64,000 nt of DNA from Phallusia mammillata (lineage: Eukaryota). The notes below the pieces were generated by a model. It made no database searches and had not been told where the DNA came from. It saw only the letters and a list, made by a program, of their open reading frames with translations. Positions within the stretch are counted from its first letter, which is position 1. Every line of letters begins with the position of its first letter. Where the stretch lies: NCBI GenBank assembly GCA_965637545.1, contig OZ281495.1, positions 2,728,001 to 2,792,000 on the forward strand, written 5' to 3'. This document shows, in pieces, positions 1-63,936 of the stretch. The position numbers and the translations under genes were made by a program.

Positions 1-288
1 AGGAAATACAGGATTGGATACAAACTTTGGTCGGTGAAGACAAAGAAATCGCAGAGCAACTCCAACTACTGATGAAGCGATGCTGGGATCAAGATCCAAC
101 AAAACGTCCTACAATGACTGAAATAAAAGAAGAATTGAAAACGCGTTTGGATAAGCAACAAACTACCAAGCTACTTTCTCAAGTTTTGACAACTCTGACT
201 CAAATGGATTTAGACGAGCAACCGCAAGTCAGCGAAAGTCGACGCGTCCCTCTTCACCATTTTTCACCCCGGTCCGGAAGTTTTCACG
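1..288 (+). CDS. 3' end of RIPK-like kinase exon (left-arm copy of unit 1)
   Basis: LMKRCWDQDPTKRPTM (kinase subdomain XI); phase-1 donor CAC G|gtaaat at 289. Confidence 0.9.
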
Positions 289-518
289 GTAAATTAATCG
301 GTCAATACATATAAATTTATTATAATAAGAAGTAACCCCGAGTAGAAGCAGATTTCCTTGCCCGAGACGCTTTGGAACTGGTAGTCAAAACAATTAAGTT
401 GAGAGATAATGTGACAATGTGATCTGTTATATTTCTTGGCGGTTCAGAAGTTACACAGTAACATAAAAAAATCTAAAGGTATTAAGTCGTTTTGTCATAT
501 CACCCATCTATATTTCAG

Positions 519-10017: not shown

Positions 10018-10778
10018 TCACTTGGTCAACTTCGCTTTGCTGTTTTGCAATTTCCTTTCACTTATTGCAATCAATTTTTCTCGTTGTTCCTCAGTTATAT
10101 CCTCCGCTGTTTTGTAAACTTCGATCGCTTTTGTGTAACATTCGATTGCTTCTTTGATTCGTGAAGTTGTCTCACAAACAGCACCAAGATTGTTCAACAA
10201 GTGACCGTAGATGTAATACTTTGAACTTTCATTCCCGAACTTTGTTTCCATAAGTTCAAGTCCAAGTTTTATTGTTGTTTCACTCGATGCAAAATCACCG
10301 ATGTGATGTTGACTCACTTCAATGTGATGCAAACACCGAACCTCCTTTTTACATCGAATTTTTTCATTTATTTGAAGGTCACGGATTTGCTGAACCATGT
10401 CACGCATCAGTGGGATCACGTGATCGCGCACGATTTCTATGTTTCTCGACTCCGAAGATGAATCGGAATTTTTCATCAAATGTTCGATTGTTTTTCGAAT
10501 TTCCATCGCACAACCCACTACACTTTTCGCTACAGCGGAGTCGGGATTTTTGTTTGCATAGAAATCTGCGGCAACGCTAAACAACAAAATGGCTTCCAAA
10601 TATTCGCCGTCATCTCTAAATTTTGTGGCTTTTTCTTTCAGGTTTTCTGCAGTGACCCCTGGTTGACCAGTGATTGACCTTGAAAGTTGTTGTTTTGTCG
10701 TTTTTGCTTCGTCATATTTTTTTGTTTTTAATAAATCAACATAATTATCAATACGTTGATTGAATTCGTCAGTTTGAT
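10018..10778 (-). CDS. Unit 1 terminal exon, TPR-like helical domain
   Basis: Acceptor ttctctgcag|AT, phase 1; 59 open codons upstream of the ORF-track start; TPR motif YGHLLNNLGAVC...EAIECYTKAIEV. Confidence 0.88.
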
Positions 10779-19700: not shown

Positions 19701-22700
19701 TAGGGCACGACTTTATCTGTGATTGGTTTACCTGTAGGTTGCTGTGGTGATGAGCTGCTGGAAGTAGGACGGTTTTCTGTAGGTAACCTTCCAATGTGTT
19801 TTCCTTATGTTACCTTTTCAGCGCTACATATTTATTTATTTCTCTCAATTGCAGATTTTCACGTAATATTGTCTTATTTGATTTATTTCACTGTTCGTTC
19901 TAGTTGCGTGCTTTGTTTCGCATTACCTCGCTGGATTTTTCGCATAAATAGTTGTCGCTCTCGGATGTGCCCAGTAACCTTCATAAATTGTTTTGGCCTA
20001 TGATTGGTCAACCTCCGGTCGGCAGACAGCAGTGTTTTGAGGGACGTTTAGTAAAAGGTCGATTTGCTATATCGATTTGACTTTACGTCGTGGTTATTTT
20101 TTATATATAGAGTATATTTAACTTGATACAATGTTTATTAGCCTATGGAAAAGTTAGGAAGAATCGCAGGGCTTCGTTTACAGAATTGGAAGGGGGCATA
20201 GAATATATTAGATTAGCAGGTTCTTTAAAGCGTTTTTGGTCCAGGTAACATGTGCATCTCATATCCTGGTACTTCTAACACAATGGACCAGAAAAACTTT
20301 TTTAGAAAAGTAATCACTATCACCTGTTTGAATGTTCGCGATTTACTTCATTTATTATTTTTTGGATATCTGGACTCTTTGTGGAATAATATGAACCAAC
20401 TGAACTTCACAAGTTCAGCGGTAAGCCCGTCAAATATCGAAACAAGCACTGTTGCCTGCAAGTCCAAGAAAGACTCTGTCGTGGGTTCGAGTCCCATCAG
20501 AGCCCTTGCCATTTGGAATGATCGGCTGGTTTGGTATACCGCGTTTAAAAGACTGATCCTAGTGATTTAGTTATAACTACGCCGTTATCACTGATCTGAA
20601 TAAACGCTTGAGGGTTGATCCCAGTTACGAAATTACGTGCATCCTAACTGCTTAGCTGTCAGGTTGTTGCTTAACTAAAGCTAAGTTTATTGATGTTACG
20701 AGAAATAACTTTAAACCGGCTCAGGCATAATCGCGGTCGTTCACACACATTTGCGTTAGTCAGGTCATAAGCTTCAAAACAAGCACACAAGTCCCAATTA
20801 TTTGATTCTACGTGTCCATAATTGGTTACCTGCAGGTTGCTGTGGTGATATGCTGTTGAAACGGGCGATCAACTTTTGTACGGACGGGTTGAATTTTTCG
20901 TCATCGTTTCTAATGGCGTCTGAACAAACAAATGGGTGAAATGTGTTTTTTTTCTCACTGCCTATAAGTATTCTTGGTAACAATACGTTTATCAATAACT
21001 AGAAGTTCCTACGAGCCAACGTATCTCATACCCGATTGCTGTGCATTGCTGCTAGTTGGAGTTTCTTCTTGTTCATAAGAAGGCAATTGTTTGTTTTTCT
21101 GTGAGGTGCCGGCTGATGCTAATGACAATAAATCATTGTTGGTTAAGTATTGGTGCTATTGTGTTACCTACAATGATTTTTGTTTTCGCCTATACATATT
21201 TTAATAAATATATAACTTATTTTCGGACCTATTTCCTCGTAAAGTTATACGAGTTGCCGCTAAACCAATATTGACTTTCCACCATACTGGCAACGCATGT
21301 TTGCTGTCGTTTAAGGCAGTGATTTTCAAAGTTTAACACAAATGGCAGAAATAGCTTTTCTTTCATAAAAGTAATTCTCCGCTATCACCACTTTGAATGT
21401 TTCTTCGTGATTTACATCATTTATTTTTGTGTAACAAACAGATTCGTCGTGAAATATTAAAAATATAATTGCGTGGGTCCGTTATCAATTGGTTGAGTGT
21501 GACATTGATTTTAATATGCGCCAAGTGTTCCGCGACTTAAAGTAGGTAAAACAAAAACTGGTAAATTTATAATGATTTTCTAAATTATCGGAATTTCCAT
21601 TATCGTTTTGTCCACCCCATACCTAGTTGCTGCGGTTTCCTGGATGTAGGAGTTTCCCCTTGTTGAGAAGAAGATGGTGACCGTACCACTTGTGCTTCAT
21701 ATATCGGTTTAATTGTCTTTTTTATGGCCGCACTTGTTGTAGAGGGGCCTGAAAGTTGATTGCTTATAGATATCTTTATTTAGTGAAGACATTTGCCTTG
21801 CTTTCCGAGAGAAATAAAACCAAGATTTATTTGAAACATCGTCTGTGCACCGAGTGAAATTGTTTGACGTTCGGTTGCCAAAAGACGAATATTGACTTTA
21901 CAACAAACTGGCAGAGGGCTGTTACGGCTTTATATTGACCTTTTTTAAATCTCAAAAGTTTTAAAAAACGATCGAACAAACAGCAATGTTACGACAAATA
22001 AAACAAAGTTTAATCAATGAAAAATAGTTTTGATTGATCAGATCGGAAATGGAAGACCTGCGGACATTTAGCTCTAAAAGTGCGCTCTGTATAGTTTTGC
22101 CGTTGTAAGAACCAAACCTTGGGATTACATTACACAAAATTGTTAGTGCGGCCTCGCGAGTAGTCAGGTGGCTTCATAAACTGAGCATCTCACCCTAGTT
22201 CTAGTACGGGGATGCTGAAGGTTTTATACGAAAAAACAATTGACATTGTTAAATCCTACTATTTTTTTTTTACTCTGGGAGGATTTTTTACCTTGCTGAG
22301 AAGAAGGCAACTCTTGTACGCCCTCCGCTGTTTCGCTTAACCGTCCTTCGGTTCCACCCGATGTGAAGGGCACTGAAATATAGATGGGTGATATGACAAA
22401 ACGACTTAATACCTTTAGATTTTTTTATGTTACTGTGTAACTTCTGAACCGCCAAGAAATATAACAGATCACATTGTCACATTATCTCTCAACTTAATTG
22501 TTTTGACTACCAGTTCCAAAGCGTCTCGGGCAAGGAAATCTGCTTCTACTCGGGGTTACTTCTTATTATAATAAATTTATATGTATTGACCGATTAATTT
22601 ACCGTGAAAACTTCCGGACCGGGGTGAAAAATGGTGAAGAGGGACGCGTCGACTTTCGCTGACTTGCGGTTGCTCGTCTAAATCCATTTGAGTCAGAGTT

Positions 22701-25138
22701 GTCAAAACTTGAGAAAGTAGCTTGGTAGTTTGTTGCTTATCCAAACGCGTTTTCAATTCTTCTTTTATTTCAGTCATTGTAGGACGTTTTGTTGGATCTT
22801 GATCCCAGCATCGCTTCATCAGTAGTTGGAGTTGCTCTGCGATTTCTTTGTCTTCACCGACCAAAGTTTGTATCCAATCCTGTATTTCCTGGCAGTCTGG
22901 TCTTTTTCCTTTCTTGATTTCCTCTAATAACTCTCTTCGCTCTTCCTGAGTCAGACGTGGATACGGAGCTTTACGATTTAGTGCCCAGTGGATGATCATT
23001 GAAAATGCGTAAACATCATGTTGCTTCCTAGGCTTCATGCTGAGGTCCTTCAGTTTTTCAGGAGCTGTGTAATAGGGAGTGAATTGAGGCCTTTCTTTCT
23101 TGGTTCGTGCCAAAGGATTCACATTTGCCGAAATACTGTAAGTTGCCAGTTCGGCCCCGCCAAAATCGATTATTTTGCAATGGAGCTCTTTAGAAAACAT
23201 AACATTTTCGGGTTTTAAGTCCTGATGAATTAAACGTTTATCAGGTAAATTGTGACAGAAAGCCATTGCTGATGCTACTTCGTATAAAATACGAACACGC
23301 AAAGCAAGGCCCAGTTCTTTTGATGTATCCTGTAGTAGCTCTTTGAGATTCCCGCCTTTGTAATATGCCATCACAATTCCTATTGCGAAAGTCCATTTGA
23401 CATAGCCAAAAACCCGAACGACATTTTCATGATCTGCTTTCTGCAAGTGTTCCATTTCTTCTTTGATTCTAAAAAGAGAGTTTTTTTTTCAGCTGCATGT
23501 TACGTTTTGTGCATGTAATAACGCAAAGCAAAGATCTCGGTAGGACAGGTGAGGTGGTATGTCCCCTCAACAAAATGATTGAAAACAATTTATCAAACGT
23601 CACACAACCCGCATTCCTCGCTTTTTAATCTTCGGTTTTTAGCAATGATTAAAAATGTCGCATCTCGCACCACACATCAGGAAATCAAGCAGGCCAACCA
23701 AGATTAGTAGTCACGATGGCTGGCGCGCTTTGCTGGTTAATTCATCTAAGATTGCGCAGTAGTTTGTCATTATCGTGTAGTCCATGGAATTAATGCCGCT
23801 GGACGAAGCTTTTGAGGTATAACTAGTTTTGTAAGTCCACACATATACCAGATACACCAGCACAATATATAAAATTAGCAAATGTTTTCAAAATTGCCAT
23901 TTTTTAAAATTTAATTTCGATTTGTTACCTCATTATCATATTTTACAAATTGTTGTGAAGTCATCAACACAAAATTAATCTTAAATAGTACGTTTCTTCC
24001 ATATTTGCGATAGATTTGCACCGCTCTATATAACAAATCGTATAACTTACGTTTTTTCAAGCCGCGCCTTTTCTTGGGTTCCACCAGATACTTCAAACAC
24101 TTTGATGGCAACTTCTTGCTTTAACCCATTGTGGTATCCGAATATAACATCCCCGAAGCCTCCTGAACCGGCCACGAATTTGTCAAGGTTACATGTGATG
24201 TCACCACAATCCAATTCCCGTAACTGTGACACAGAAAGATTATGTTTTTACCCCTGATGTCCAACGTATATTTCATTGAGGTCCAACCAAGCCATACAAC
24301 TAACTTAACCAATGTTATTCAAAACTTTGTTCAACCGGTTTGCAAACGAAAAGTTTTTGATTCAAATCCCGTTGGGCTTTAGTAATTGCTGAGTAATTTA
24401 AAACCCAGTTTTTTACATTGCAAGATTTGTTTTTGAAACAAATTCTCTGCTACAAATTTAGGTTTATCAGACAAGTCAGAGCGAGTTGAGTAAAACATAG
24501 TTATCGACTAGTTTCAGAGTGTTAAAATGGTTTATATAGAAAAAGAAAGCGGATTATGTCAGTAAGTCCTCCTAAACTTAACTCTTAGCTAAACATTATC
24601 AGTCACTAGAAAGCACAAAAGGGCCTTAGAGCTACTAACACAGGACCTTACATCACAGGCCTACTAATTTCCAGTAAAGTGCGCACTCAAAAATAATTCC
24701 GGCAGAGAGCGCACTCAAAAATCTTAAATGCACTTTGTAAAAAAAATGCTGACGGTTAGGGCTATGGGGGTTGGTCTGAGGTTTCACAATAACACTGAAA
24801 TCAGCCCAAAAACCCAGTTTATGTTAAATTCATTCATTTAACCCTACCCCAGACGCAATTGTAATTTGAATAACTGCGCTCTTTTCACCATCGATCGGTA
24901 TTTAAGAAACTTTTTGTGGTGTGAGTTTCTGTGTTAGTAGATCCTCCCAAAATAGGAAGGAACGAAAATACTTTAGGATTAAAAGAAAAATTTAAAACAA
25001 ATTTATTTGAATCCCGGTAGTCTAATTTGAAACTATACTTTTTCATACGGTGGACAAATAAAACCTGTTTAGTGTAATGAACAAACAAACAAAAGAAAAA
25101 AATTTGTAGAAGTTGCTTACCTCTTTCGGCGAAGTCAT
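10018..25138 (-). CDS. Unit 1 gene model: RIPK-like kinase - linker repeats - SH3 - linker repeats - TPR-like domain (~955 aa, 15 exons)
   Basis: Exons 25121-25138, 24051-24223, 22603-23468, 22292-22372, 21623-21748, 21032-21118, 20830-20919, 19732-19776, 18566-18669, 18032-18181, 17594-17624, 16816-16938, 16597-16686, 16033-16155, 10018-10778 sum to 2868 nt = 956 codons in one open frame with compatible phases. Confidence 0.72.
11958..12260. repeat. CCCGAA/GGCCCG-rich interspersed repeat (MITE-like)
   Basis: Clustered cccgaa/ggcccg motifs at 11970-12040 and 12190-12255. Confidence 0.35.
12337..15120. mobile_element. Decayed DNA-transposon-like material in the last intron of unit 1
   Basis: Starts near CACTAGAAAAAA; AGCC/GGCT-rich repeats at 12350-12720 and 15030-15120 (30-bp tandem pair); exon-like fragment NFCTVALYHMFYLEYP at 14199-14246. 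Far end not found. Confidence 0.3.
13270..13661. mobile_element. MULE-like MITE with ~120-bp TIRs and 8-bp TSD
   Basis: TIRs GGGTGACACTAAAACGCTGAATGGGCGGGA...; aaattttt duplicated at 13262-13269 and 13662-13669. Confidence 0.8.
16033..16155 (-). CDS. Unit 1 type-A linker exon (VPSTLNNTEERSTEP...QQP)
   Basis: tttag|TG ... G|gtatga, 123 nt, phase 1-1. Confidence 0.8.
16597..16686 (-). CDS. Unit 1 type-B linker exon (DPTRRGSKGLFTTVRKFISRLNRKSPQPPT)
   Basis: ttcag|AT ... G|gtaaac, 90 nt, phase 1-1. Confidence 0.8.
16816..16938 (-). CDS. Unit 1 type-A linker exon (VPSTSGDTEERSTEP...PQQL)
   Basis: tttag|TG ... G|gtataa, 123 nt, phase 1-1. Confidence 0.8.
17594..17624 (-). CDS. Unit 1 31-nt micro-exon (ILEIKEVKNT), phase 0 to 1
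   Basis: acccag|ATA ... ACA G|gtaagt; restores phase after the SH3 exon. Confidence 0.55.
18032..18181 (-). CDS. SH3 domain, second exon (EEEGWARGRCNGKEGVFPTNY...)
   Basis: acacag|GAG; SH3 core GW..G...G.FP.NY; ends AAG|gcaagt (GC donor) or 4 nt later at a GT. Confidence 0.85.
18566..18669 (-). CDS. SH3 domain, first exon (DVEVLRRMEVTYSYEPGNADELQLKVGDIIDVYND)
   Basis: gtcag|AT ... GAT|gtgggt; SH3 RT-loop motif Y.Y.P.N.DEL.L..GD.I. Confidence 0.88.
19368..19710. mobile_element. Truncated copy of a CCGAATATTCGG-type MITE (fuller copy at 57547-58006; mirror 3181-3523)
   Basis: Aligns by eye to 57547-57690 and 57880-57925. Confidence 0.65.
19732..19776 (-). CDS. Unit 1 short linker exon (ENRPTSSSSSPQQPT)
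   Basis: cctacag|AA ... G|gtaaac, 45 nt, phase 1-1; 3' half matches type-B exons. Confidence 0.6.
20830..20919 (-). CDS. Unit 1 type-B linker exon (DAIRNDDEKFNPSVQKLIARFNSISPQQPA)
   Basis: gttcag|AC ... G|gtaacc, 90 nt, phase 1-1. Confidence 0.82.
21032..21118 (-). CDS. Unit 1 A-related linker exon (ASAGTSQKNKQLPSYEQEETPTSSNAQQS)
   Basis: cattag|CA ... G|gtatga, 87 nt, phase 1-1. Confidence 0.65.
21623..21748 (-). CDS. Unit 1 A-related linker exon (GPSTTSAAIKK...SRKPQQL)
   Basis: tttcag|GC ... G|gtatgg, 126 nt, phase 1-1. Confidence 0.7.
22292..22372 (-). CDS. Unit 1 shortened type-A linker exon (VPFTSGGTEGRLSE...SQQ)
   Basis: tttcag|TG ... G|gtaaaa, 81 nt; the paralogous downstream donor is lost (gattta). 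Confidence 0.65.
22603..23468 (-). CDS. Unit 1 main kinase exon, RIPK-like TKL kinase
   Basis: EEMEHL (alphaC), IHQDLKPEN, IIDFG, YTAPE, DVYAFS, LMKRCW..DP.KRP; ttttag|A phase 2, G|gtaaat phase 1. Confidence 0.93.
24051..24223 (-). CDS. Unit 1 kinase N-lobe exon
   Basis: cacag|TTA; GSGGFG and VAIK; AC|gtaagt; 173 nt, as in units 2 and 4. Confidence 0.92.
25121..25138 (-). CDS. Unit 1 start exon (MTSPKE)
   Basis: ATG ACT TCG CCG AAA GAG|gtaagc, phase 0 fits the next exon; paralog MTSANE at 46657-46674. Confidence 0.7.
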
Positions 25139-36820: not shown

Positions 36821-37071
36821 TCTTGACAAGAATGTGCAGATTATATTTAATCAGTTTAAACAAATTATGTCTTTATAATTTTTAATAATACGCTTTTCGA
36901 GATTTTTTGCCAACCATGTAGTAAGCCTGCGTGCCACATGAAAACCCTTTGTGTACCACAATTAGGGAACCACTGGTCAAGTGGCTAAACACAGCGACAG
37001 GTTGTAGGTGTAAGATGGTTTTGCTCGCTCACAGCGAATTCTGCGCAACAAAAACACAATGACGTCACAAT

Positions 37072-37200
37072 TGATGTTGCCTTGACTCATTTCATAGTAA
37101 TGCAAACACCAAACCTCCCATTTACATCGCATTTCTTCTTTTATTTGTAAGTTGCGAATTTATTGGACCATGTTACGCATCAGTGCGATCACGTGATCAC
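37072..37200 (-). pseudogene. Orphan fragment of a fifth TPR exon
   Basis: DHVIALMRNMVQ*IRNLQIKEEMRCKWEVWCLHYYEMSQ aligns to residues ~59-97 of the TPR ORFs; in-frame stop. Confidence 0.85.
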
Positions 37201-38610
37201 CTACTCGGAAAAGATAAGAAACTGTCGTGGAACTGATTAAGTAATTGTTTTGTGATGTCACAAGTATGTACTCTTTCATTGTGATGTCATACTTTAATTG
37301 CATGCAAACATTAAAAGTTAAAAAAAAAACATTAAAAAAAGTTATTGATTTTTCCTCAATGTTTTACTTTGCTTCATACAGTGGTATGATGAGGCTCTTG
37401 ATCAGCAGCGATAAAAACAAATTGAAACACTTGGGATCATCTAAAGCAAAAATAAAATTAACAGAAAGAGTCAAAGCAAGAACTCAAATCCAGGTTGGGT
37501 TTGATTACAACTGCTGTGAAGTAAGAAAGACTTGTTTTGTGCTTTTCGATTCATCATTATACGTGATCTGTGTGACGAAAAACAGACAGACGAATTGTGT
37601 TTTTAGATGTTTCTGAGAATTGTTACACCTGTTTCCTCACACATGTACGCCTCCAAGCACTATACAAAACCCTTTCCTTTTAAATCAAAGATAGTGAAAG
37701 TATAAACAAATGTCTCTTCTAGTTTCAAGGGTTATGGTGACCCTTGGTTGGCTCAATTACTTGTGTTTGTATGAAAAAAAAATACACAAAACTAAAAACT
37801 CACTCGTGACCATGTTTATAGAATTTAGTTTCAAATTTTTAGAGCAAACAACATTTGTCCCTTTACTCTCTTGTTTACCTAGTGATTTTATTATAAGTTT
37901 AACTTTTGCAGGAAACGTGGTGAAAACTGGTGACAAAAATGCTTATATAGGAGCTTCTGACAACCAAATAACAGTTGAAATTTTCTTGTGGAAACTTGTT
38001 GGTGTTAAAAAGGCGCAGATGGTTGTATTTGGTCCGATACAACTTATAAAGGTTTGTTGTTTCTCGATACTAACCAAAACTGTGGTTGGTCAGATGCAAA
38101 AACTGCCAAATCATTTTACTTTTAAACCAAAGTTTGTTGTTCTCTTTATATTAACTAAAAACTATCGTGATTTTTAATGGCGTTTCTAATGGCGAAGTTA
38201 AAAATACATGACAATTTTTTTAAAAAAAACTAATACAAATACAATTGAATTTCACTACGTCTGGAAAAACATTTTATATTTACACCAAAGCCTTATCACT
38301 AAAACAAATGCGCTATGTTTAAAGAAACCTGCAATTATATACAACTAGTTAACTCTGCATTTACGTCAAATTCTTTTTTTTTAATTTTACCTGGAAATGA
38401 TGTTCTATGAAAAGTCTCTTCAAAACATTGAATTTTTATCAAATTTATGAAGAGTAAGTTTTATTTTTACATTTGTACAAAAAATCGTCACTAAATGCAG
38501 CAATTTTGCACAAAAGCAAAAAATTAAACATAAAATATATTTACAATGTGAATTTCTTTCACAATAATTGTGTCACAGACAAAACTTTAGTTGTTTTGCA
38601 GCAAACTTAA

Positions 38611-39365
38611 TTACTTGTTCAACTTTGCCTTGCATATTTGCAAACCCCTCTTAATTTTTGCAATCTCTTCTCCTCGTTGTTCCTCAGTTAAATCCTCCGC
38701 TGTTTTGTAGGCTTCGATTGCTTTTGTGAAATATTCGATTGCTTCTTTGAATTGTGAAGTGTTACCGCAAACAACACCAAGATTGCTCAACAAGTAACCG
38801 TAGATTGAATACTTTAAACTTTCATTCCCAAACTTTGTTTCCATAAGTTCAAGTCCTAGTTTTATTGTTGTTTCCCTCGATGCCAAATCCCCGATGTAAT
38901 ATTGACTCAGTTCAATGGAATGCAAACACCAAACCTCCATTTCACTTCGAATTTTTCCGTTTATTTGAAGGCAACGGATTTGCTGAGTCATGTCACGCAT
39001 TAGTGAGATCACGTGATCGCGCACGATGTCTTTGTTTCTCGTCTTTAAAGATGAATCAGAATTTTTCATCAAAAGTTTGATTGTGTCGCGAATTCCCTCT
39101 GCACATATCGCTACACTTTTCGCTACTGCAAAGCCGGGATTTTTCTTAACATGGAAATCTGCGGCAATGCTGAAAAATAGAATTGCTTGCAAATATTTGC
39201 TGTCATTTTTAAATTTTGTGGCTTTTTTTTCCAGGTTTTCTGCAGTGACCCCTGGTTGACCTGTGATTGACCTTGAAAGTCGTTGTTTTGTTGTTTTTGC
39301 TTTGTCATACTTTTCTGTTTTTAATAAATCAATATAGTTTTGAATGCGTTGGTTGAATTCGCCGT
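38611..39365 (-). CDS. Unit 2 terminal TPR-like exon
   Basis: ttttgcag|AC, phase 1; 57 open codons upstream of the ORF-track start. Confidence 0.88.
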
Positions 39366-42300
39366 CTGCAAAAAAGTAAATATTTTTTCCTTTAGTTCCA
39401 AAAAATAAGAAATAAATAATAAATTTGTAGACGTTTTTCGCCTACTAAACTTGAGCTGCGACCACACGTTCCACTGCTTTATGTTTTTGTGATGCAAATA
39501 AATAAAAAAGGAAACTTAGAGGTTTTATCTTATGCAATATATGACAAAGACAAGATAAATTCCACGCAGTGTACATCACGCACCAGGGGCATTAATGGCG
39601 TCAATTCATATTTTAGGATTTCCACGAAGTTTGTTACCGCGATTCGCTTTAATTAATGATTTGATTGACAGTGGAAAAGATGTTGCCATCGGCTTTATTT
39701 CGAAGGGCAATGTTTTAGTAAAATTTATTGTGCTTATTTATAGAAATGCCCTTGTTTTTGATCTGATTCCTTATTTTGTACCGAAATAACAATCAGATTC
39801 CTGCTTAAAGTAAAAGTAAACCTAGACCGGAGCTGTCGTAACTCGTAAGATACTCGTATTTTCTACGAACAAAGAGTTGCTTAAATGGATTATTTCTGGT
39901 AACATATATGGCATGTAATATGTCATGGCTCATAGCAGTGTAAAGATTGTTTAAAACGTTGGCTTCATTTTGTCTAAAATTTAATTTTTCGGGTGTCCTT
40001 ATTTTGGGATCCATGTCAATGGCAACCCTGGTTAAGGTAAAAACATCGTTAAATTAGTGTTTGCAAGATCGAGCGTTTGGGTCGTGACTGATACGATCTG
40101 AGGAAATAGTAAATTGACAATTGACCGTTTATAATGCCGAAAACGTTTTTTTTACTCGTTAGTCGGTGGTTATAACATAACTGTTAACAGGATGAGTTCG
40201 AACAAGTCATTGCAGTCATACCAGATAGCTGCTTCTGGGAATTACCATTTGTTAAAATTAAGTTTGTACTGCCTCATGTGCGCCCTTTGTTGGATTGTTG
40301 GATTGTTTTTTCACGGAATAAACTGGCAAAGACACAAAAATCTCAAAAAAGATTTTTTTACAACAATTTAATTGGTAGTTAAGAGTAGATATTAGTATCG
40401 ACGTCAACAAACATGTGGAATTACATTAAGATCCCCACAGCAAATTAGTTACAATTATTAAATTAATTGACAGTTGGCAATGTGTTGCAATATGTGATTG
40501 ACAACAAACTAATCAACTATTTCGTTGCTTGAACCATAATAATTGCAAAACTGGTTGGCTGTTAAGCACGGACAAAAAATACGGACAACAAAAAACGTTA
40601 TGTTTGCAGCTTTTGGATGCCAGCACACAAGATCAAACATTTTTACCTACAGGTTGCTTTGGTGATGTTTTGCCAAAACGGGGGAATATTTTTTTCAAGA
40701 ATGTTGTCGAGCGTTTCTTGGAATTTTGGCTGATAGGATATACAAAAAAAAAATTTAAACGATAAATATTTCTTTGACGACATATAGACAGTATTTCTGT
40801 TGCTGATTGTACTTTTTTCTTTTGTTTTGAAAAGGTGCATTTGCCACTCTTAGCAACTGCTTGTTGGTTTACCTGCAGGTTGCTGTGGTGATGTGCTGCT
40901 GGAATGAGCGATTTCCTCTTGTGGTACAGTGGGGCGTTTCTCATCACCGTGTCCAACTGGATCTGAAGAACATCAATTAAGAATAAAATAATAGTTTAAA
41001 ATAATCACTTATCCAATGCAAACAAATCGTTTGTCACCGAATATTCAGCTATTGTCAATTAAATAAGATTACTAAAAGTTAATAAGATTACTAGTGCTGG
41101 ATTGTTGCGTATAAATTTTTATGTTTTCTTATTATTTTTCACGCTATGTCATTATGAACTTAGCTTGTGTAACGTCAAGTGCACAATTACACGATACACC
41201 CCAAAGTGTTTAACTTTCGTACTGACGTCGAGGAGCGTCTTGCAGCAACGTGACTGGTGGAATCTAATCAATTAAAATTTGCACAAAACGTTTGTTTGAA
41301 AATGTTCAGCAACACAAACAGATAGAAGTGTCACACATGTAACTGTTGGCAATATCTGTTGAACGAAATTCAATTCAATATATCTCATACCCTCCCTCTT
41401 TTGTCTGCTGGATGGAGACACCTTGTCTTGATAGGAAGGAGATTGTACTTGCTCTCGTGTGCCTTTTGTCGGTCTAGATGATTGTCCATCGGTGTCACCT
41501 GATGTGGAGGGAACTAAAAAATATTAAAGACTTTTCTACCACAGAACATAATAAAAAATCCCCACACAACAATTGGCAACATCTTATTCATCAACTTTAT
41601 TAGGATAAAATAAGTTTCCGCGAGACAAACTATCTCCAACTTGGGTAAAGTATTCTGTTTCTCGCGGAAGTTACCGCTATTGTGTGTTTAATATTTTACC
41701 ATGAAAACTTCTGGACTTGGTTGAAAAATAATGAAGAAAAACGCGTCGACCTTCGATAACTTGCGGTTGCTCGTCCAAATCCATTTGAGTCAAAGTTGTC
41801 AAAACTTGAGAAAGTAGCTTGGTTTTCTGTTTGTCTAAATACTTTTTTAATTCTTTTTTTATTTTATTCATTGTGGGACGTTTTGTGGGATCTTGATCCC
41901 AGCATCGCTTCATCAGTAGTTGGAGTTGCTCTGCGATTTCTCTGTCTTCACCGACCAAAGTTTGCATCCAATCCTGTATTTCTCGACAGTCTGGTCTTTT
42001 TTCTCTCTTAATTAATTCCAATAACCCCCTTCGCTCTTCTTCTGCCAGACGTGGATAAGGTGCTTTACGAGCCAAGACCCAATACAATAACATACTGAAT
42101 GCATACACGTCATGCTGCTTCCTTGGTTTCATGGTGGGATCCTTCAATTTTTCCGGAGCGGTGTAGTAGGGAGTATATTGTGGTCTTTCTTTCTTGGTTC
42201 GTGCCAAAGGATTCACAGTTGCCGAAATACTATATGTTGCCAGTTCGGCGGAACCAAAATCAGCCAATCTACAGCTTAGTTCTTTGGTAAGCAAAACGTT

Positions 42301-45300
42301 TCCAGGTTTTAGGTCCTGGTGAATTAAACGTTTGTCTGACAAGTTGTGACAGAAAGTCAATGCTGATGCTATTTCGTATAAAATGCGAAGGCGCACAGCA
42401 AGGTCCAGTTCTATGGATGTATCCATTAGTAGTGTTTCTAAATCTCCACCTTTGCAGTATTCCATCACAATTCCCATTGAGAAAGACCATTGAACGTAGC
42501 CGAAAATCTTAACGACATTTTCATGATCTGCTTTCAGCAAGTGTTCCATTTCTTCCTCTATCCTAAAGAATATTTCAATCAATTTTGCTAAGGTGGTTTT
42601 GTATGTGACAAATCTTACATTTTCACAGCGAGTGATTTTTTCTTTTTTCCACCAGCTACCTCAAATACTTTGATGGCAACTTCCTTCTTTAACCCATTGT
42701 GGTATCCAAATAGAACATCCCCGAAACCTCCTGAACCGGCCACAAAGTCATCAAGGTTGCACGTGATGTCACTACAGTCCAATTCCCGTAACTGTACAGA
42801 AGAGATGAGAATATACAAATGGTAGCACTCACATGAGACAAAGTTTGGTAAAAAAATAGGTATAAAACGCAAAGAGCACTAATACCTCTTTCAAAAGAAA
42901 TTTCTGTGAAACGGTTTAGGCCAGTGGTTCTTAACCGGGATTCGGCGTTGCCGAACCCCTGGGGTTCGATCGAACGTATTTTTGAAGTGCAATACAAATA
43001 CTCGTTTTTGACTTTAGTGTATCAAAACCCTGGAAGGTTAAACTTAGGCAGGGCTGTTTTAAACATCTCGAAACAGTTTTTGTGGCACTAAAAAGAGTAT
43101 TACCAGCCTAATAACTATATGTATCAGACGTTTTGTACGCCTATTGTGTGCCAACAATGCGAACAAAACAGGTACCACAAGCATCACAATATAGATTATG
43201 ACATAATAAACACTTAAGTGATCTCCTCGCTGTGCAGCCAATCTGTGTACCGAGCTAGAAATTAATTTGGGCTTTTTGGGCGCTATTAGATGGTAAATAC
43301 ATAATATCAACAAAACAAAAATAAGCAGGCGGTCGTTGGTGAAATAAGAATCTGCGATGCAGGTGCACCCCTGCACTAAGGTTTTAATTTCTTTTTTGAC
43401 GTAACAAAGAGCATTGTTCGCGTTGTTCCTAAGCAGAAACACAACGAAATTTTGTTGACAGCAAAAACTTATTTCTTCATCTTTTTCATGTTTGTGTACA
43501 GATGCTAAAGATACAATGCTTTATTTTGGTAAAGCAAAAAATTGCCGGTATTAAAGCACTTATGAAACAAGTGGCTTGTATTACTGTATTATGTCAGAAT
43601 TGAACAAAATGACAAACAGTAACTGTTGCCATTACGATTGAACAAAAACTAATTATGACCCACCAAAGAAAATGGGGCAAAAACCTGGGATGTAACTTTG
43701 GGGTTCGACCAAAGGCTGAAGAATATCGTAAGGGTTCGGCCGTTATAAAAAGGTTAAGAACCACTGGTTTAGGCTATTTGGCAAAGGCGACTCGTGCTTA
43801 AAATTGTTGGGGGTGCTGCTCCCAGTTTTAAAAAAAAAAATAATACACGCTTGAACTTGCAGCTACTTTGTGACGTGTTTTCGTCACGCCTTAATGCACA
43901 TGAGTGTAAACAACAGACCGTATCATTTGTGTATTTTGTTTACTTGCACGGCGACAAACCAAACACAATAATTTGGGCATTAACAATTTTCTTCTTGATT
44001 TCAAAATTATAATTAAAACAATATTTTCTGATGCAAACAGTGCCAGTGCATCATTTTTCAAAGTTTACAGGTAATTTTGTGCCTTTGAAGTAAGTAGGGA
44101 AATGCATAAGAAATTTTATGTATGATTGTTATCTCGATATAGCAGGGCTTCTCAAATGGCGGACCCCGGTCCATATCCGGACCTTTGAGGCGTTTGACGG
44201 TCATTTGGTTACGGCAACATATAGACAATTATTTGTGTGTTAATTACTTGATCATTGCTATTTAGCGATAGTTTTTAAACTGAGGTTCGCATAGCATTTG
44301 ATCGAGGGACTTTGAGGAGTCTAATACTATGTTTCCATGTCGCGTTTTGGCTTAGCCCAAACTGTTATGTCCATGTTTTGAATTTAGCGCCAAAAACGAG
44401 TCGTGTTTCCATGTCGCTAACGCAGTCAAGCGTAACGTGGTACAGCGATCTGTTGCCTGCCTCGCGGGATTCGAAACTAAAACGAAATATGGTAAACAGG
44501 CTTTGGAATGTAATAAAAACAACAAACTGTGCTGCCTACAAATTAACTTCTTCATCGTAAGCTGACTTGAGTGAATTAGGATTTGAAAAAACTACGAAAA
44601 TTAGCTTCTACAGATAGAGAGTTGATACTGCTGTTATCTAAAATGAGCAGGTCTATTACTAAGAAACTAGTTTGATGTATTAGAGTTTTTGGAGATAAAC
44701 AAAGTAATAGGAAGTTTTAAAGTAAGAACAACCTTTATCAAAGAAGGACCAGATGCACTGTGCTTGGTAAGACTTGCTTATTTTGTGTTAGTAATCATTT
44801 TTTAATGACTTATTTCAACCTTGCACAGTTATGTGTTATTGGTGTTTAAACATTTATGTGTGCTTCTACACATTCTTTTCTTGTTTAATAAAGGCAACAA
44901 TCTAACTGTTGTTTCTTTACACTTAACAGAAAACAGTTATTTACTAAATTAATTTTTGCTTTTAGGCTTGACAACCAAGAACTACTCAATCACTTGCAAG
45001 AACTCAAGCTGTTTTTCCAGCAAACCAGTTAATGATTCTCTCTATGTATGCGAATGAAGTGATTGTGTTAATACTGTGACTCTATTTTGTCTGTTTTCAA
45101 TTTGCAATACAAAAATTTGAACAATTTTTAAACTACCATTGGTGATTTTATTACACAGTCAATGCACAGAAATGATAGAATATAATTAAAACGCTAAAAA
45201 CAGTTTTCAATAAAGTAGTCACCAATAATTGATGCACCAGAACAAGAAAAATAGACAGAAGATGTACATATCACAATTTACAAAATTCATATCACCACAA

Positions 45301-51319: not shown

Positions 51320-52104
51320 TCACTGTTTTTGCAGCAAATTTGTAATTTTGTCCAACTTTGCTTTGTTGGATTTTAAATACCTTTCACCTTTTTCAATTCT
51401 TTCTTCTTTATCTTCCTCGGTTAAATCTCTCACTGATCTATAAACTTCGATTGCTTTTGTGTAATTTGCGTCTGCTTCTTCGAGTCGTGAAGTTTCCTCG
51501 CAAACAAAACCAAGATAGTTCAACAAGGTACCATAGATTCGATACTTCGAACATTCATTGCCAAATTTTGTTTCCATAAGTTCAAGTCCACGTTTTATTG
51601 TTGTTTCGCTCGATGTCCAATCCCTGATGTAATATTGACTCCAGGCAATACAACCCAAACAGCGAACCTCCCATTCGCATCGAATTTTTTGGTTAATTAG
51701 AAGATCGCTTATTTGCCGAGTCATGTCGTGCATCAGTGGAATCACGTGATTGCGCACAATTTTTTTGTTTTTTGACTTAAAAGTTGAATCAGATTTTTCC
51801 ATCAGAAGTTCTATTGTATCTCGAATTTCAAATGCACGGACAGTTACACTTCTCGCTACAGTAAGGTGAGGATTTTTCTTCGCATAGAAATCTGCGGCAA
51901 TGCGAAAAAACAAAATGGCTTTCAAATATTTGCCGTCATATCGAAGTTTTTTAGCTTTTCTGATTAAGTTATCCGCGGTGAGCCCTGGTAGTCCTTCGAT
52001 TGATTTTAAAAGTTGTTTTTTAATCTTTTCTGCTTTTCCAGCGTTTCCAGATATTAATAACTCAAAATAACTGTGTATGCGTTGGTTGAAGTCGACATTT
52101 CCAT
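51320..52104 (-). CDS. Unit 3 terminal TPR-like exon (most divergent copy)
   Basis: tttctcag|AT, phase 1; open for 261 codons to the stop. Confidence 0.85.
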
Positions 52105-58430: not shown

Positions 58431-59191
58431 TCACTTGTTCAACTTTGCTTTGGTTTCTTGCAAACCAACCTCACTTGTCGCAATATATTCTCCTCGCTGT
58501 TCCTCAGTTAAATCCTCCGCTGTTTTGTAAACTTCGATTGCTTTTGTGTAATATTCGATTGCTTCGTTTAATCGTAAAGTTTTCTCAAAAGCATCACCAA
58601 GATTGTTCAACAAAGAGCCGTAGATAGAATACTTTGAACTTTCATCCCCGAACTTTGTTTCCATAAATTCAAGTCCAAGTTTTATAGTTGTTTCCCTCGA
58701 TGATAAATCCCCGATGTAATATTGACTCAGTTCAATGTTATGCAAACACCGAACCTCACAATAACATCGAATTTTTTCGTTTATTTGAAGGTCGCGGATT
58801 TGCTGAGTCATTTTACGCATCAGTGGGATCACGTGAACACGCACAATTTCTGTGTTTCTCGGCTTCGAAGATGAATCAGAAGTTTTCATCAAAAGTTTGA
58901 TTGTTTCTCGAATTTCCAGCGCACACACAACTACACTTTTCGCTACAGTAAAGTCGGAAAATTTCTTCACATAGAAATCTGCGGCAATACTAAAAACCAA
59001 AATGGTTTCCAAATATTGGCCTTTATTTCTAAATTTCGTGGCTTTTTCTTCCAGATTTTCTGCAGTGGCTCCCGGTTGACCTGTGATTGACCATAAAAGT
59101 TGTTGTTTTGTCGTTTTTGCATCGTCGAGTTTTTTTGTTTTTAATAAATCAACATAATTTTGAATGCGTTGATTGAATTCGTCGGTTTGGT
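58431..59191 (-). CDS. Unit 4 terminal TPR-like exon
   Basis: tccctgcag|AC, phase 1; 59 open codons upstream of the ORF-track start. Confidence 0.88.
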
Positions 59192-62100: not shown

Positions 62101-63936
62101 GCCCCGTGGTTTAGAACTAGTAAAATTTATTTTTTATCAAACTGGTGCTGGATTGTTGCTTGTAAATGGTTATTTCTTCCTATTCTTTTTCACGTCTTAT
62201 CATATACTTAGCTTTTGTAACGTCAAGTGCACGAAAATCAAAACACGGACCAATTTGTGCAAAGTGTGAATTTGTGATGGTTATACCTCCAGATTGCTGT
62301 GCTGATATGCTGTTGAAACGAGCAATTAACTTTTGTACTGGTGTAGTGGAGCTTTCCGCGGTACCGTGACTAGTGGGATCTAAATCAATTAAAAATTTAC
62401 ACAAAACGTTTGTTTGATATTGCTCTACACTCAAAACAGCTAAAAAGTGTCATAAATGTAACTGTTGACATTATCAGTTGAGCGAAATTCCATTCAATAG
62501 ATCTTGTACCCTTCTGCTGTTTTCTGCTGGATGTAGAAGCTTTGCCTTGTTGGGAAGAAGATTGCACTTGCTCTAGTGCCCCCTCTGTCGGTCCCGATGG
62601 TTGTCTATCGGTGTCAACTGATGTGGAAGGAACTAAAAATAAGAAAGATTTTACTACCACAGTTAAAATTGCCACACAAGAAATGGCAACATCTTAACCA
62701 ACAACATTATTAGGATAAAATAAGTTTCTACGAGACAAATTATCTCCAACCTGGGTAATGTATTCTGTTATGGGTGGGAGTTATCGTTTGTTAAAATAAT
62801 TTTCTATTGTTCTATTACTATTTTACCATGAAAACTTCCGGACCAGGTTGAAAAATAGTGAAGAGGAACGCGTCGACCTTCGATGACTTGCGGTTGCTCG
62901 TCCAAATTCATTTGAGTCAAAGTCGTCAAAACTTGAGAAAGTAGCTTGGTGGTTTGTTGCTTATCCAAACGCGTTTTCAATTCTTTTTTTATTTCAGTCA
63001 TTGTGGGACGTTTTGTGGGATCTTGATCCCAGCATCGCTTCATCAGTAGTTGGAGTTGCTCTGCGATTTCTTTGTCTTCACCGACCAAAGTTTGCATCCA
63101 ATCCCGTATTTGTTGGCAGTTTGGTCTTTTTCCTCTCTTAATTTCCTCTAACAACTCTCTTCGCTCTTCTTCTGCCAGACGTGGATACGGGGCTTTACAA
63201 GCAAGAACCCAGTATAATATCATAGCAAATGCGTAAACGTCATGTTCCTTGTTAGGTTTTGTGAGAAGATCCTTTAGTTTTTCAGGAGCGGTGTAGTAGG
63301 GAGTGTATTGAGGCTTTTCTTTCTTGGTTCGTGCCAAAGGATTCCTAGTTGCCGAAATACTATAAGTTGCCAGTTCGGCGCTTCCAAAATCAGCCAATTT
63401 ACAGCTTAGTGCTTTAGTGAGCAAAATATTTCCAGGTTTTAAGTCCTGATGAATTAAACGTTTATCGGGCAAATTATGACAGAAAGCCATTGCTGATGCT
63501 ATTTCGTATAAAATACGAACGCGTACGGCAATGCCCAGTTCTTTGGATGTATCGATTAGTAGTGTTTCTAAATTTCCCCCCTTGCAGTATTCCATCACAA
63601 TTCCCATTGCAAAAGACCATTGGACGTAGCCAAAAATTCGAACGACATTTTCATGATCTGCTTTCAGCAAGTGTTCCATTTCTTCTTTAATTCTGAAGAA
63701 CATATTTTGAATAAAGTGCCTGTGGCGATTTTATTGTGTTGTGTAGGAATTCTTATAACTTACGTTTTTGTGGCTTGTGTCTTTTCCTGGGCTCCACCAG
63801 CCAACTTAAATACTTTGATGGCAACTTGTTGCTTTAACCCATTGTGGTATCCAAATATAACATCCCCGAAACCTCCTGAACCGGCCATGAAATCGTCAAG
63901 GTTACAAGTGATGTCACCACAGTCCAATTCCCTTAA
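58431..63936 (-). CDS. Unit 4 gene model: RIPK-like kinase - A-B-A-B'-B'-C - TPR-like domain (start exon outside window)
   Basis: Exons 63764-63936, 62827-63692, 62510-62632, 62287-62379, 61661-61786, 61434-61523, 60916-61005, 60687-60779, 58431-59191 sum to 2415 nt = 805 codons. Confidence 0.78.
61079..61149 (-). other. Half type-A exon ending in a stop codon
   Basis: tttag|TT CCA TCC ACT...GGG TCA TCA TAA; acceptor intact, donor half deleted. Confidence 0.65.
62827..63692 (-). CDS. Unit 4 main kinase exon
   Basis: IHQDLKPGN, LADFG, YTAPE; ttcag|A, G|gtaaaa. Confidence 0.93.
63764..63936 (-). CDS. Unit 4 kinase N-lobe exon
   Basis: gcgcag|TTA; GSGGFG, VAIK; AC|gtaagt; 71-nt intron follows. 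Confidence 0.92.

What the first reader, a model, noticed from the sequence alone, without database searches (positions are those of the whole stretch)
10018..10599. Hypervariable, helix-periodic residues in the TPR domains suggest a diversifying ligand groove
Seen (gap-free alignment of the four ORFs): positions 32 (M/E/F/L), 85 (K/M/W/C), 92 (H/S/C/N), 133 (H/Y/T/S), 140 (A/V/F/D), 144 (T/N/E/K), 176 (L/E/R/Y) and 186 (N/I/S/E) differ in all four copies. Spacing is i+7, i+4 and i+10, next to invariant stretches such as ETTIK.GLE.METKFG. By hand count, units 2 vs 4 are ~73% identical in the TPR ORF and ~85% in the kinase exon. Established: TPR A-helices line the concave binding groove. Inference: positive selection on specificity.
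Basis: partly seen in the sequence, partly recalled or inferred. Interest (0 to 1): 0.8.

Follow-up and report, generated by a model that had tools for sequence, protein, structure and literature searches.

The report
Hypervariable groove codons in kinase-TPR paralogs
Four tandem sea-squirt genes that join an RIPK-like kinase to a TPR-like helical domain differ most at about ten single codons on one face of alternate helices, as expected if each copy is selected to bind a different partner, though four copies cannot prove positive selection.

Summary
The 193-aa "ORF" is part of a 761-nt phase-1 terminal exon (10018-10778) of an RIPK-like kinase gene in an ascidian tandem array.

**Against the raw count:** nine four-state columns is what a nearly neutral model gives (8.6 ± 3.1).

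**For selection**
- Site models favour a class with ω about 19 at 4.6% of codons (2ΔlnL 33.5; the highest of 100 null simulations was 7.2).
- The signal survives a multi-nucleotide-mutation term.
- It names positions 32, 85, 92, 129, 133, 176 and 186, but not 140, 144 or 187.
- It vanishes if a class of sites about 11 times faster overall is allowed, so four sequences do not settle it.

**Independent support**
- A pLDDT 97.5 model has 11 helices with a KLC/LGN-type TPR fold.
- All nine columns lie on alternate A-type helices (P = 3e-5).
- Positions 133, 140 and 144 are TPR positions 2, 9 and 13, which face the concave side.
- The same columns are hypervariable in other Phallusia proteins and in six Ciona copies.

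**Verdict:** diversification of a binding surface is likely, the ligand is unknown, and the family is uncharacterised. The scan holds other first-reader notes on this same array.

The parts
10018..10778 (-). Unit 1 terminal exon (phase-1 acceptor, includes the stop codon). It encodes the 252-aa TPR-like domain.
   Evidence: The frame is open upstream of the TTG. Polypyrimidine tract and CAG acceptor at 10779-10781. AF2 model with pLDDT 97.5 and 11 helices.
10471..10539 (-). Helix H5 (model residues 80-102, reader positions 21-43), A-type. It carries hypervariable codon 32 (10504-10506) and codon 29.
10303..10365 (-). Helix H7 (reader positions 79-99), A-type. It carries hypervariable codons 85 (10345-10347) and 92 (10324-10326).
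10168..10215 (-). Helix H9 (reader positions 129-144), helix A of the one Pfam-recognisable TPR. Codons 129 (10213-10215), 133 (10201-10203, TPR position 2), 140 (10180-10182, position 9) and 144 (10168-10170, position 13).
   Evidence: Pfam TPR_1/TPR_2 register, PMC1261162.
10024..10092 (-). Helix H11 (reader positions 170-192), C-terminal capping helix in an A-type position. Codons 176 (10072-10074), 183, 186 (10042-10044) and 187 (10039-10041).
38611..39365 (-). Unit 2 terminal TPR-like exon.
51320..52104 (-). Unit 3 terminal TPR-like exon, the most divergent copy, with an 8-codon longer tail. No kinase exon lies between it and unit 4.
58431..59191 (-). Unit 4 terminal TPR-like exon.
22603..23468 (-). 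Unit 1 kinase exon (C-lobe and tail: HQDLKPEN, DFG, APE). Its phase-1 GTAA donor matches the phase-1 acceptor of the TPR exon.
   Evidence: Pfam Pkinase 6.7e-35. Splice sites.
41700..42562 (-). Unit 2 kinase exon. Its closest solved relative is RIPK1.
62827..63692 (-). Unit 4 kinase exon.
42619..42791 (-). Unit 2 kinase N-lobe exon (GSGGFGDV glycine loop, VAIK). The 5' boundary is approximate.
   Evidence: ORF translation. Repeat family D10, conserved in units 1, 2 and 4. Donor site.

Best explanation
The stretch is most of the last exon of one of four tandem paralogs in an ascidian genome.

Gene structure. Each gene encodes a RIPK1-like, non-RD (HQD) protein kinase followed, after a variable linker, by a roughly 250-residue TPR-like solenoid of 11 helices. 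This structure is shown in part by sequence and by a related Phallusia transcript.

What evolves fast. About a third of the TPR-like domain's codons are under strong constraint. These include the helix-packing core and the ETTIK.GLE.METKFG / LLNNLG motifs. About ten single codons on the exposed face of the four alternate A-type helices (H5, H7, H9, H11) have been replaced on nearly every branch. Their rate is several times that of the flanking codons, the rest of the exon and the neighbouring introns.

Inferred mechanism. [quoted passage not shown] Conserved groove residues, such as the asparagines of LLNNLG, would hold a ligand backbone. The hypervariable neighbours (TPR positions 2, 5/6, 9, 12/13) would read its side chains. 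Duplication followed by diversifying selection would then give each paralog its own binding specificity, which steers or gates the attached kinase.

The ligand is unknown. It could be a foreign molecule or a diversified endogenous partner.
For: Gene model:
- The acceptors and donors are canonical and phase-compatible.
- Phallusia protein P0158 carries the kinase C-terminal end, a linker and the TPR domain in one transcript-derived ORF.
- The kinase is closest to RIPK1, E = 1.7e-28.

Fold:
- The AF2 model has pLDDT 97.5 and pTM 0.93, with 11 helices.
- Foldseek matches the KLC1/2, LGN/Pins and sNASP TPR domains at probability 1.0 and TM 0.5-0.6.

Rates:
- ω is 0.52-0.68 in the TPR exon against 0.20-0.26 in the kinase exon.
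- M1a vs M2a gives 2ΔlnL 33.5, p = 5e-8. The null bootstrap maximum was 7.2.
- The signal persists with a multi-nucleotide term (18.0, p = 1e-4), with F61 frequencies (30.7) and with only the three closest copies (12.7, p = 0.002).
- The selected codons differ at 0.65 per nucleotide. Flanking codons differ at 0.08-0.27, the exon mean is 0.20, and unit 2 vs unit 4 introns differ at 0.16-0.20.

Placement:
- All 9 four-state columns lie on H5, H7, H9 or H11, P = 3e-5.
- Positions 133, 140 and 144 are TPR positions 2, 9 and 13, which are concave and ligand-contacting according to PMC1261162.

Recurrence in independent paralogs:
- Four other Phallusia proteins show 2.9 states at these columns against 1.2-1.7 elsewhere.
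- Six Ciona domain copies show 3.4 states against 1.6-2.3, Mann-Whitney p = 3e-4. Nine of the 12 selected columns have 3 or more states against 51 of 236 overall, p = 7e-5.
- The Ciona hot columns include 133, 140, 143 and 144 on H9, and 88, 91 and 95 on H7.
Against: - Only four DNA sequences were available.
- A null model with two overall-rate classes (7.7% of sites about 11 times faster, ω no more than 1) fits as well as M2a. Adding ω > 1 to it gives 2ΔlnL of only 1.0.
- The kinase exon also gives a weak signal (2ΔlnL 9.6, p = 0.008). Part of it comes from TCN/AGY serine codon switches, so the test is somewhat liberal on this data.
- The number of four-state columns is no more than a nearly neutral model predicts.
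- Sites 140, 144 and 187 are not individually supported.
The hydrophobic-moment test was ambiguous for H7 and H11. The TPR register of H5, H7 and H11 is inferred.
- No RNA evidence exists for these particular copies and no allele data could be extracted.
- Informative sites hint at a mosaic history among units 1, 2 and 4.
Confidence: 0.6

Rival explanations
1. No adaptive diversification. These are simply the least constrained surface positions of a relaxed domain. Their apparent excess rate comes from saturation, multi-nucleotide mutations, codon-specific rate variation, or patchy gene conversion from unsampled paralogs in a large family.
For: M1a already places about 60% of codons at ω = 1 and predicts 8.6 ± 3.1 four-state columns. 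A fast-rate class removes the need for ω > 1. The kinase control is weakly positive. The family is large: exon bins reach about 40 times the intron baseline depth at 90% likeness or more, so donors for conversion exist.
Against: Neutral sites cannot change faster than nearby introns and synonymous sites, yet the selected codons differ at 0.65 per nucleotide against 0.16-0.24. The excess is exactly one in-frame codon wide and is stronger at codon positions 1-2 than at position 3. It recurs at the same columns in Ciona. It is confined to alternate helices. The signal persists with an explicit multi-nucleotide term. Conversion can only shuffle diversity that must first have arisen and been kept at these codons.
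Confidence: 0.22
2. The variable face is not an external ligand groove. It is an intramolecular or paralog-specific interface that co-evolves with each gene's own variable part, for example docking of the gene's own S/T/P-rich linker or kinase for autoinhibition.
For: The linkers differ greatly between units (2.1 to 11.8 kb between the kinase and TPR exons, little shared sequence). P0158 has a 190-aa low-complexity linker. TPR domains that bind their own protein's segments are known in KLC and PP5 (my own knowledge, not tested here).
Against: The same TPR-like module occurs without a kinase: behind a Sushi-like ectodomain and a transmembrane segment in P0152, and alone or in tandem in Ciona. 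It is hypervariable at the same columns there.
Confidence: 0.12
3. Some or all copies are decaying pseudogene exons, and the variation is simply degeneration.
For: The array contains relics: a 45-aa TPR fragment at 37070-37204 and an inverted kinase fragment at 3-302. It also contains transposon insertions. Unit 3 has no kinase exon nearby.
Against: All four exons have intact frames of about 250 codons, with conserved splice sites and stops. Between 28% and 40% of codons have ω near 0. 119 of 249 columns are invariant. The predicted fold is very confident.
Confidence: 0.05

Closest known systems
KLC (kinesin light chain) and LGN/Pins TPR domains (TPR_12-type, about 42-residue repeats)
   Same: They are the best structural matches (Foldseek probability 1.0, TM 0.5-0.6). 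The sequence motif resembles the TPR_12 consensus (KFGNESSKY..LLNNLG...EAIE.YTKAIE), and Ciona homolog P0004 passes the Pfam TPR_12 threshold. In those proteins peptides bind the concave face made by the A helices (my own knowledge).
   Different: Sequence identity is only 13-18%. The window copies fall just below Pfam's TPR thresholds (27.3 vs 27.8 bits). The helices are longer and the N-terminal four helices are not recognisable as TPRs. The domain is attached to a kinase and is hypervariable between paralogs, whereas KLC and LGN are conserved single-copy genes.
RIPK1 and the RIP kinase family
   Same: The kinase exon is closest to RIPK1, then RIPK4, RIPK2 and RIPK3 (E = 1.7e-28 to 1e-18). 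Its catalytic loop reads HQDLKPEN with no arginine before the aspartate (a non-RD kinase). From my own memory, not tested here, RIPK1 reads HKDLKPEN. G-loop, VAIK, DFG and APE are all present.
   Different: There is no death domain, CARD, RHIM or ankyrin module. The C-terminus is a TPR-like solenoid. The genes sit in a lineage-specific tandem array, and orthology to any vertebrate RIPK was not tested.
Hypervariable repeat domains of candidate immune receptors: LRR and TPR exons of brown-alga ROCO / NB-ARC-TPR genes, plant NLR LRRs, lamprey VLRs
   Same: These are clustered, birth-and-death gene families in which site models place positively selected residues on the concave face of a repeat solenoid next to conserved structural residues (PMC3341825).
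   Different: Here the signalling module is a RIPK-like kinase (or a Sushi-TM receptor), not NB-ARC or ROCO. The whole TPR-like domain is one exon rather than one repeat per exon. No link to immunity has been shown.
Kinase plus C-terminal TPR architectures (plant BSK kinases, mycobacterial PknG)
   Same: The domain order is the same: a Ser/Thr kinase followed by a TPR domain that mediates partner binding or regulation (my own knowledge, not tested here).
   Different: The kinase lineages are unrelated, no paralog hypervariability is reported for them, and no sequence relationship was seen in any search here.

Membership tests
Tetratricopeptide repeat (TPR) domains | 34-residue helix-turn-helix motif with the consensus small and large residues (positions 4, 7, 8, 11, 20, 24, 27), recognised by Pfam TPR models | tested here: inconclusive
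   One repeat (reader positions 132-165) matches TPR_1, TPR_2 and TPR_8 at E = 3e-6 to 1e-3, but at 27.3 bits it is just under the 27.8-bit cut-off. Ciona homolog P0004 passes TPR_12 (57 bits vs 30.1) over the homologous H7-H10 region.
Tetratricopeptide repeat (TPR) domains | Tandem antiparallel helix pairs that form an alpha-solenoid resembling solved TPR structures | tested here: met
   The AF2 model has 11 helices and pLDDT 97.5. 45 PDB matches have E of 1e-3 or better; the best are TPR domains (KLC1/2, LGN/Pins, sNASP, OGT, consensus TPR designs), with 14-3-3 proteins also among them.
Tetratricopeptide repeat (TPR) domains | Variable sites lie on the concave face formed by the A helices | tested here: inconclusive
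   All 9 four-state columns are on alternate helices H5, H7, H9 and H11. Positions 133, 140 and 144 are TPR positions 2, 9 and 13. Coordinates could not be inspected, and the hydrophobic-moment check was ambiguous for H7 and H11.
RIP kinases (RIPK1-4) | Kinase domain most similar to RIPK kinase domains | tested here: met
   The top PDB sequence hits are RIPK1 (1.7e-28), then RIPK4, RIPK2 and RIPK3.
RIP kinases (RIPK1-4) | C-terminal death domain, RHIM, CARD or ankyrin module | tested here: not met
   The exon after the kinase is the TPR-like domain. Pfam shows no death-fold or ankyrin hit in the kinase or TPR exons. The linker exons were not searched.
Sites under positive (diversifying) selection by the codon site-model criterion | A model with a class of ω > 1 fits significantly better than the nearly neutral or beta null | tested here: met
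   M1a/M2a 33.5, M7/M8 33.9 and M8a/M8 33.5. The bootstrap null maximum was 7.2. The result is robust to a multi-nucleotide term, to F61 frequencies and to a 3-taxon subset. The implementation is my own and was checked only by simulation.
Sites under positive (diversifying) selection by the codon site-model criterion | The signal is robust to site-to-site variation of the synonymous or overall rate | tested here: not met
   With two overall-rate classes in both models, 2ΔlnL = 1.0, p = 0.6. Four sequences cannot separate the two explanations.
Diversified innate immune or allorecognition receptor families | Tandem clusters, birth-and-death turnover, and a hypervariable recognition surface next to a signalling domain | tested here: met
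   The window holds four units plus relics and transposon insertions. Exon depth is about 40 times the intron baseline at 90% likeness or more. See above for the hypervariable A-helix sites.
Diversified innate immune or allorecognition receptor families | A demonstrated role in recognising non-self (induction, binding, or genetic association) | not testable with these tools
   No expression or functional data were found. Every named homolog that was looked up is annotated 'uncharacterized protein'.

The most novel reading that the evidence does not exclude
Ascidians have a lineage-restricted, germline-diversified intracellular recognition system. A single-exon TPR-like sensor module with hypervariable concave-face residues has been shuffled onto RIPK-like kinases, Sushi-type transmembrane receptors and stand-alone or tandem proteins. 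Dozens of paralogs each recognise a different foreign or polymorphic self ligand and signal through a RIPK-type kinase. This would be a chordate counterpart of plant and fungal repeat-domain immune or allorecognition receptors.
Probability: 0.2. Interest if true: 0.8.

Novelty: new variant of a known kind. Interest (0 to 1): 0.55.

Why it matters
Tunicates are the closest living relatives of vertebrates. They lack adaptive immunity but show allorecognition and large innate repertoires. An expanded, uncharacterised family that joins a RIPK1-like kinase to a binding domain with recurrently diversified groove residues would be a concrete candidate for a recognition system that signals through a cell-death or inflammation-type kinase. 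It also offers a compact case for asking how TPR specificity is encoded: one exon, about ten specificity positions, and natural variants in tandem. Testable predictions follow directly, such as residue swaps, peptide arrays, and expression after challenge or fusion.

Tried and rejected
- **Allele polymorphism and splice evidence from public runs.** The runs found were DNA-like contigs, and the RNA-labelled run held only pieces about 90% similar from paralogs. At 90% likeness the lay-out is a mixture of many paralogs, so I could draw no allele frequencies or kinase-to-TPR junctions.
- **More paralog DNA.** The word search found only Phallusia proteins without DNA. The one Ciona locus fetched (L001) has two copies, too distant (about 35% aa identity) for a joint codon analysis, so I used it at the protein level only.
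- **Hydrophobic-moment test of exposure.** It is clear for H5 and H9 (sites 114-174° from the hydrophobic face). It is uninformative for H7 (moment 0.15) and lopsided for H11. Overall permutation p = 0.08, so I do not use it as evidence.
- **My first guess of the TPR register in H7** (85 = position 2, 92 = position 9). The Pfam TPR_12 alignment of Ciona P0004 does not bear it out and suggests 88 = 2, 92 = 6, 95 = 9. Both registers keep the sites on the same helical face.
- **The kinase exon as a clean negative control.** It failed as one, giving a weak signal caused partly by serine TCN/AGY codon switches.
- **Literature.** Searches found no paper on an ascidian kinase-TPR family.
- **First bootstrap run.** It timed out and was repeated with single-threaded workers.

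Full report
**1. What the stretch is**

The window is AT-rich eukaryotic DNA with sparse ORFs.
- It holds four homologous minus-strand ORFs of 193-201 codons, at 10018-10599, 38611-39192, 51320-51925 and 58431-59012.
- It holds three kinase ORFs, at 22577-23455, 41677-42582 and 62804-63703.
- It also holds a 45-aa relic of the first kind at 37070-37204 and an inverted kinase fragment at 3-302.

The listed TTG "starts" are artefacts of ORF listing. In every unit the frame stays open for about 59 more codons, up to a polypyrimidine tract and AG. The coding units are therefore phase-1 terminal exons:
- unit 1 (U1) 10018-10778
- unit 2 (U2) 38611-39365
- unit 3 (U3) 51320-52104
- unit 4 (U4) 58431-59191

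Each kinase exon ends ...CAT G|GTAA, a phase-1 donor. It can therefore be joined in frame to the terminal exon, directly or through phase-1/phase-1 linker exons.

A small exon just upstream of the kinase exon carries the glycine loop (GSGGFGDV) and VAIK. The large exon carries HQDLKPEN, DFG and APE. The kinase is closest to RIPK1 among solved structures (E = 1.7e-28), followed by RIPK4, RIPK2 and RIPK3.

**2. Relatives**

The closest proteins are "uncharacterized" Phallusia mammillata entries, 64-75% identical. Ciona intestinalis homologs are about 35% identical and Styela clava homologs about 27%.
- Every named hit that I looked up is from an ascidian. The unnamed ones come from metagenome or Logan assemblies.
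- P0158 contains the kinase C-terminal end (MKRCWDQDPTKRPTMTEIKEELK...RVPLHYFSPR), a 190-residue S/T/P/Q-rich linker and the TPR-like domain in one ORF. This supports the kinase-linker-TPR gene model.
- P0152, the closest homolog of the domain, instead has a Sushi-like ectodomain, a transmembrane segment and then the domain.
- In Ciona the domain occurs alone or four times in tandem (P0004), and the Styela homologs show no Pfam kinase.

The domain is therefore a cytoplasmic module that has been combined with different partners.

Summed contig depth at 90% likeness or more is about 40 times the intron baseline over the TPR and kinase exons in three DNA runs. This points to a large family, although the tool warns that this depth is not a copy number.

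**3. Checking the observation**

The identities quoted for units 2 and 4 are correct: 73.1% in the ORF and 84.3% in the kinase exon.

The count of four-state columns is not remarkable in itself. Under the fitted nearly neutral model, 100 simulated alignments gave 8.6 ± 3.1 such columns.

The depth of change is remarkable. These codons differ by 2-3 nucleotides between most pairs, for example TTG/GAG/AGA/TAT at position 176. The mean pairwise difference per nucleotide compares as follows:

| Sequence class | Difference per nucleotide |
|---|---|
| Selected codons | 0.65 |
| Adjacent codons | 0.08-0.27 |
| Exon mean | 0.20 |
| Alignable unit 2 vs unit 4 introns | 0.16-0.20 |

The excess is one in-frame codon wide. 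It is larger at codon positions 1-2 (0.69-0.72) than at position 3 (0.53).

**4. Codon models**

Pairwise Nei-Gojobori ω is 0.52-0.68 for the TPR exon and 0.20-0.26 for the kinase exon.

I wrote a GY94/F3x4 maximum-likelihood implementation, since PAML is not installed. The results:

| Test | Result |
|---|---|
| M0 | ω = 0.68 |
| M1a vs M2a | 2ΔlnL 33.5, p = 5e-8 |
| M7 vs M8 | 2ΔlnL 33.9 |
| M8a vs M8 | 2ΔlnL 33.5 |
| Selected class | ω about 19-20, 4.6% of codons |
| Parametric bootstrap under M1a (n = 100) | 95th percentile 4.0, maximum 7.2 |
| With double- and triple-nucleotide rates added | 2ΔlnL 18.0, p = 1e-4 |
| With F61 frequencies | 2ΔlnL 30.7 |
| On units 1, 2 and 4 only | 2ΔlnL 12.7, p = 0.002 |

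Sites with posterior 0.9 or more are 32, 85, 92, 129, 133, 176 and 186. Sites 140, 144 and 187 reach only 0.08-0.17.

Two cautions apply.
- If both models are given a second overall-rate class, the null fits as well as M2a (7.7% of sites at about 11 times the rate) and ω > 1 adds nothing (2ΔlnL 1.0). With saturated four-state codons in four sequences, "very high dN" and "very high overall rate" cannot be told apart statistically. I judge an 11-fold, codon-wide, in-frame mutational hotspot implausible, but that is a judgement and not a test.
- The kinase exon gives 2ΔlnL 9.6. Part of this comes from TCN/AGY serine switches, so the test is somewhat liberal here.

Units 1, 2 and 4 form a near-star tree with slight mosaic hints.

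**5. Structure**

I predicted the structure from a 68-sequence alignment of family members (A3). AlphaFold2 gave pLDDT 97.5 and pTM 0.93, with 11 helices. Model residue number equals reader position plus 59.

Foldseek finds KLC1/2, LGN/Pins, sNASP and other TPR-like solenoids at probability 1.0 and TM 0.5-0.6.

Placement of the variable sites:
- All nine four-state columns lie on H5, H7, H9 and H11, the alternate helices in register with helix A of the one Pfam-recognisable TPR. P = 3e-5 against all residues.
- Twelve of 13 candidate sites are on odd-numbered helices, p = 0.002-0.004.
- Pfam's register (residue minus 131) makes 133, 140 and 144 TPR positions 2, 9 and 13.
- Magliery and Regan report positions 2, 5, 9, 12, 13, 33 and 34 as the most variable in TPRs and as exposed on the concave face, with 2, 5, 6, 9, 12 and 13 contacting ligand in HOP (PMC1261162).
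- The TPR_12 alignment of Ciona P0004 suggests that on H7, 88 is position 2, 92 is position 6 and 95 is position 9, which puts 85 at position 33 of the previous repeat. All of these are on the same face.
- Same-face spacings are enriched, p = 0.013-0.035.

I could not read coordinates, so the concave assignment is an inference from TPR geometry.

**6. Independent recurrence**

In four additional Phallusia proteins, every one of the eight covered four-state columns varies again. They average 2.9 states against 1.2-1.7 elsewhere.

In six Ciona domain copies (four in P0004, two in locus L001; 63-77% identical to each other) the window's four-state columns average 3.4 states against 1.6-2.3 (Mann-Whitney p = 3e-4).
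- Nine of the 12 candidate columns have 3 or more states, against 51 of 236 overall. This gives p = 7e-5, or p = 0.001 against columns variable in the window.
- The Ciona hot columns include 133, 140, 143 and 144 (with 136 all-different among three of the P0004 copies) and 88, 91 and 95. These are TPR positions 2, 5, 9, 12 and 13 of two successive A helices.

This is the strongest argument that the pattern is a property of the fold's surface rather than an accident of four sequences.

**7. Interpretation**

The most likely explanation is a diversifying binding surface on the A-helix face of a TPR-like module that targets or regulates a RIPK-like kinase (confidence about 0.6).
- Shown: the exon structure, the fold class, site-specific hypervariability, its recurrence, and its confinement to alternate helices.
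- Inferred: ω > 1 in the strict sense, the concave location for H5, H7 and H11, peptide binding, and any immune or allorecognition role.

Rivals are neutral fast sites or artefacts (about 0.2), an intramolecular co-evolving interface (about 0.1) and pseudogene decay (about 0.05).

**8. Novelty**

Diversifying selection on the concave faces of repeat domains in clustered receptor-like families is well known; brown-alga LRR and TPR exons are one example (PMC3341825). New here, as far as the searched library shows, are three things: the ascidian-restricted single-exon TPR-like module, its fusion to a RIPK1-like non-RD kinase, and the recurrent hypervariable positions.

Other first-reader notes of this scan describe the same array: the phase-1 terminal exons, the birth-and-death duplication, and a kinase-less paralog upstream. 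I verified the first of these myself.

Noticed in passing
window 51320-58430: Unit 3's TPR exon has no kinase exon between it and unit 4's TPR exon (58431-59191). It is either a kinase-less paralog, an alternative terminal exon of the unit 4 gene, or is spliced to something unrecognised. It also has an 8-codon longer C-terminal tail and is the most divergent copy (dS about 0.5).
   Followed up: partly
window 37070-37204 (-) and 3-302 (+): The array holds two relics: a 45-aa fragment of the TPR-like exon (64% identical to unit 1) just downstream of unit 2, and an inverted fragment of the kinase exon C-terminal part (81% identical to K2) at the window start.
   Followed up: partly
window 34786-35256 (+) and 49784-50725 (-): Transposon remnants lie between units: a reverse-transcriptase fragment (RVT_1, E = 9e-16) and an ORF with a GIY-YIG endonuclease motif (23.7 bits, just above the cut-off), which may be Penelope-like.
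   Followed up: partly
P0152 / P0005 (Phallusia mammillata proteins): The closest homolog of the TPR-like domain (64-68% identical) is attached not to a kinase but to a cysteine-rich Sushi-like ectodomain and a transmembrane segment. The module therefore seems to be cytoplasmic and exon-shuffled between receptor-like and kinase genes.
   Followed up: partly
P0004 (Ciona intestinalis XP_026692798.1): This 1277-aa model has four tandem copies of the whole 230-aa domain (67-77% identical to each other). It is either a real multi-domain protein or a gene model that fuses tandem paralog exons.
   Followed up: no
window kinase exons K1/K2/K4, codons 106 and 158 counted from FRIKEE: Serine codon-family switches (TCC/AGC, TCA/AGT) and a few other multi-hit codons give the kinase exon a weak site-model signal (2ΔlnL 9.6). 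This is a reminder that multi-nucleotide changes are frequent in this family.
   Followed up: partly
window kinase exon tails, e.g. 22603-22700: A conserved post-kinase motif, (R)RVPLH(Y/H)FS...SGSFHG, sits immediately before the donor site. It is also kept in Phallusia P0158 and P0006 and could be a docking or regulatory motif.
   Followed up: no
window 42900-43800: This stretch has extremely high summed contig depth (up to about 300 times the intron baseline), many joints and many loose ends in all DNA runs. It is a high-copy repeat or transposon upstream of the unit 2 kinase exons.
   Followed up: no
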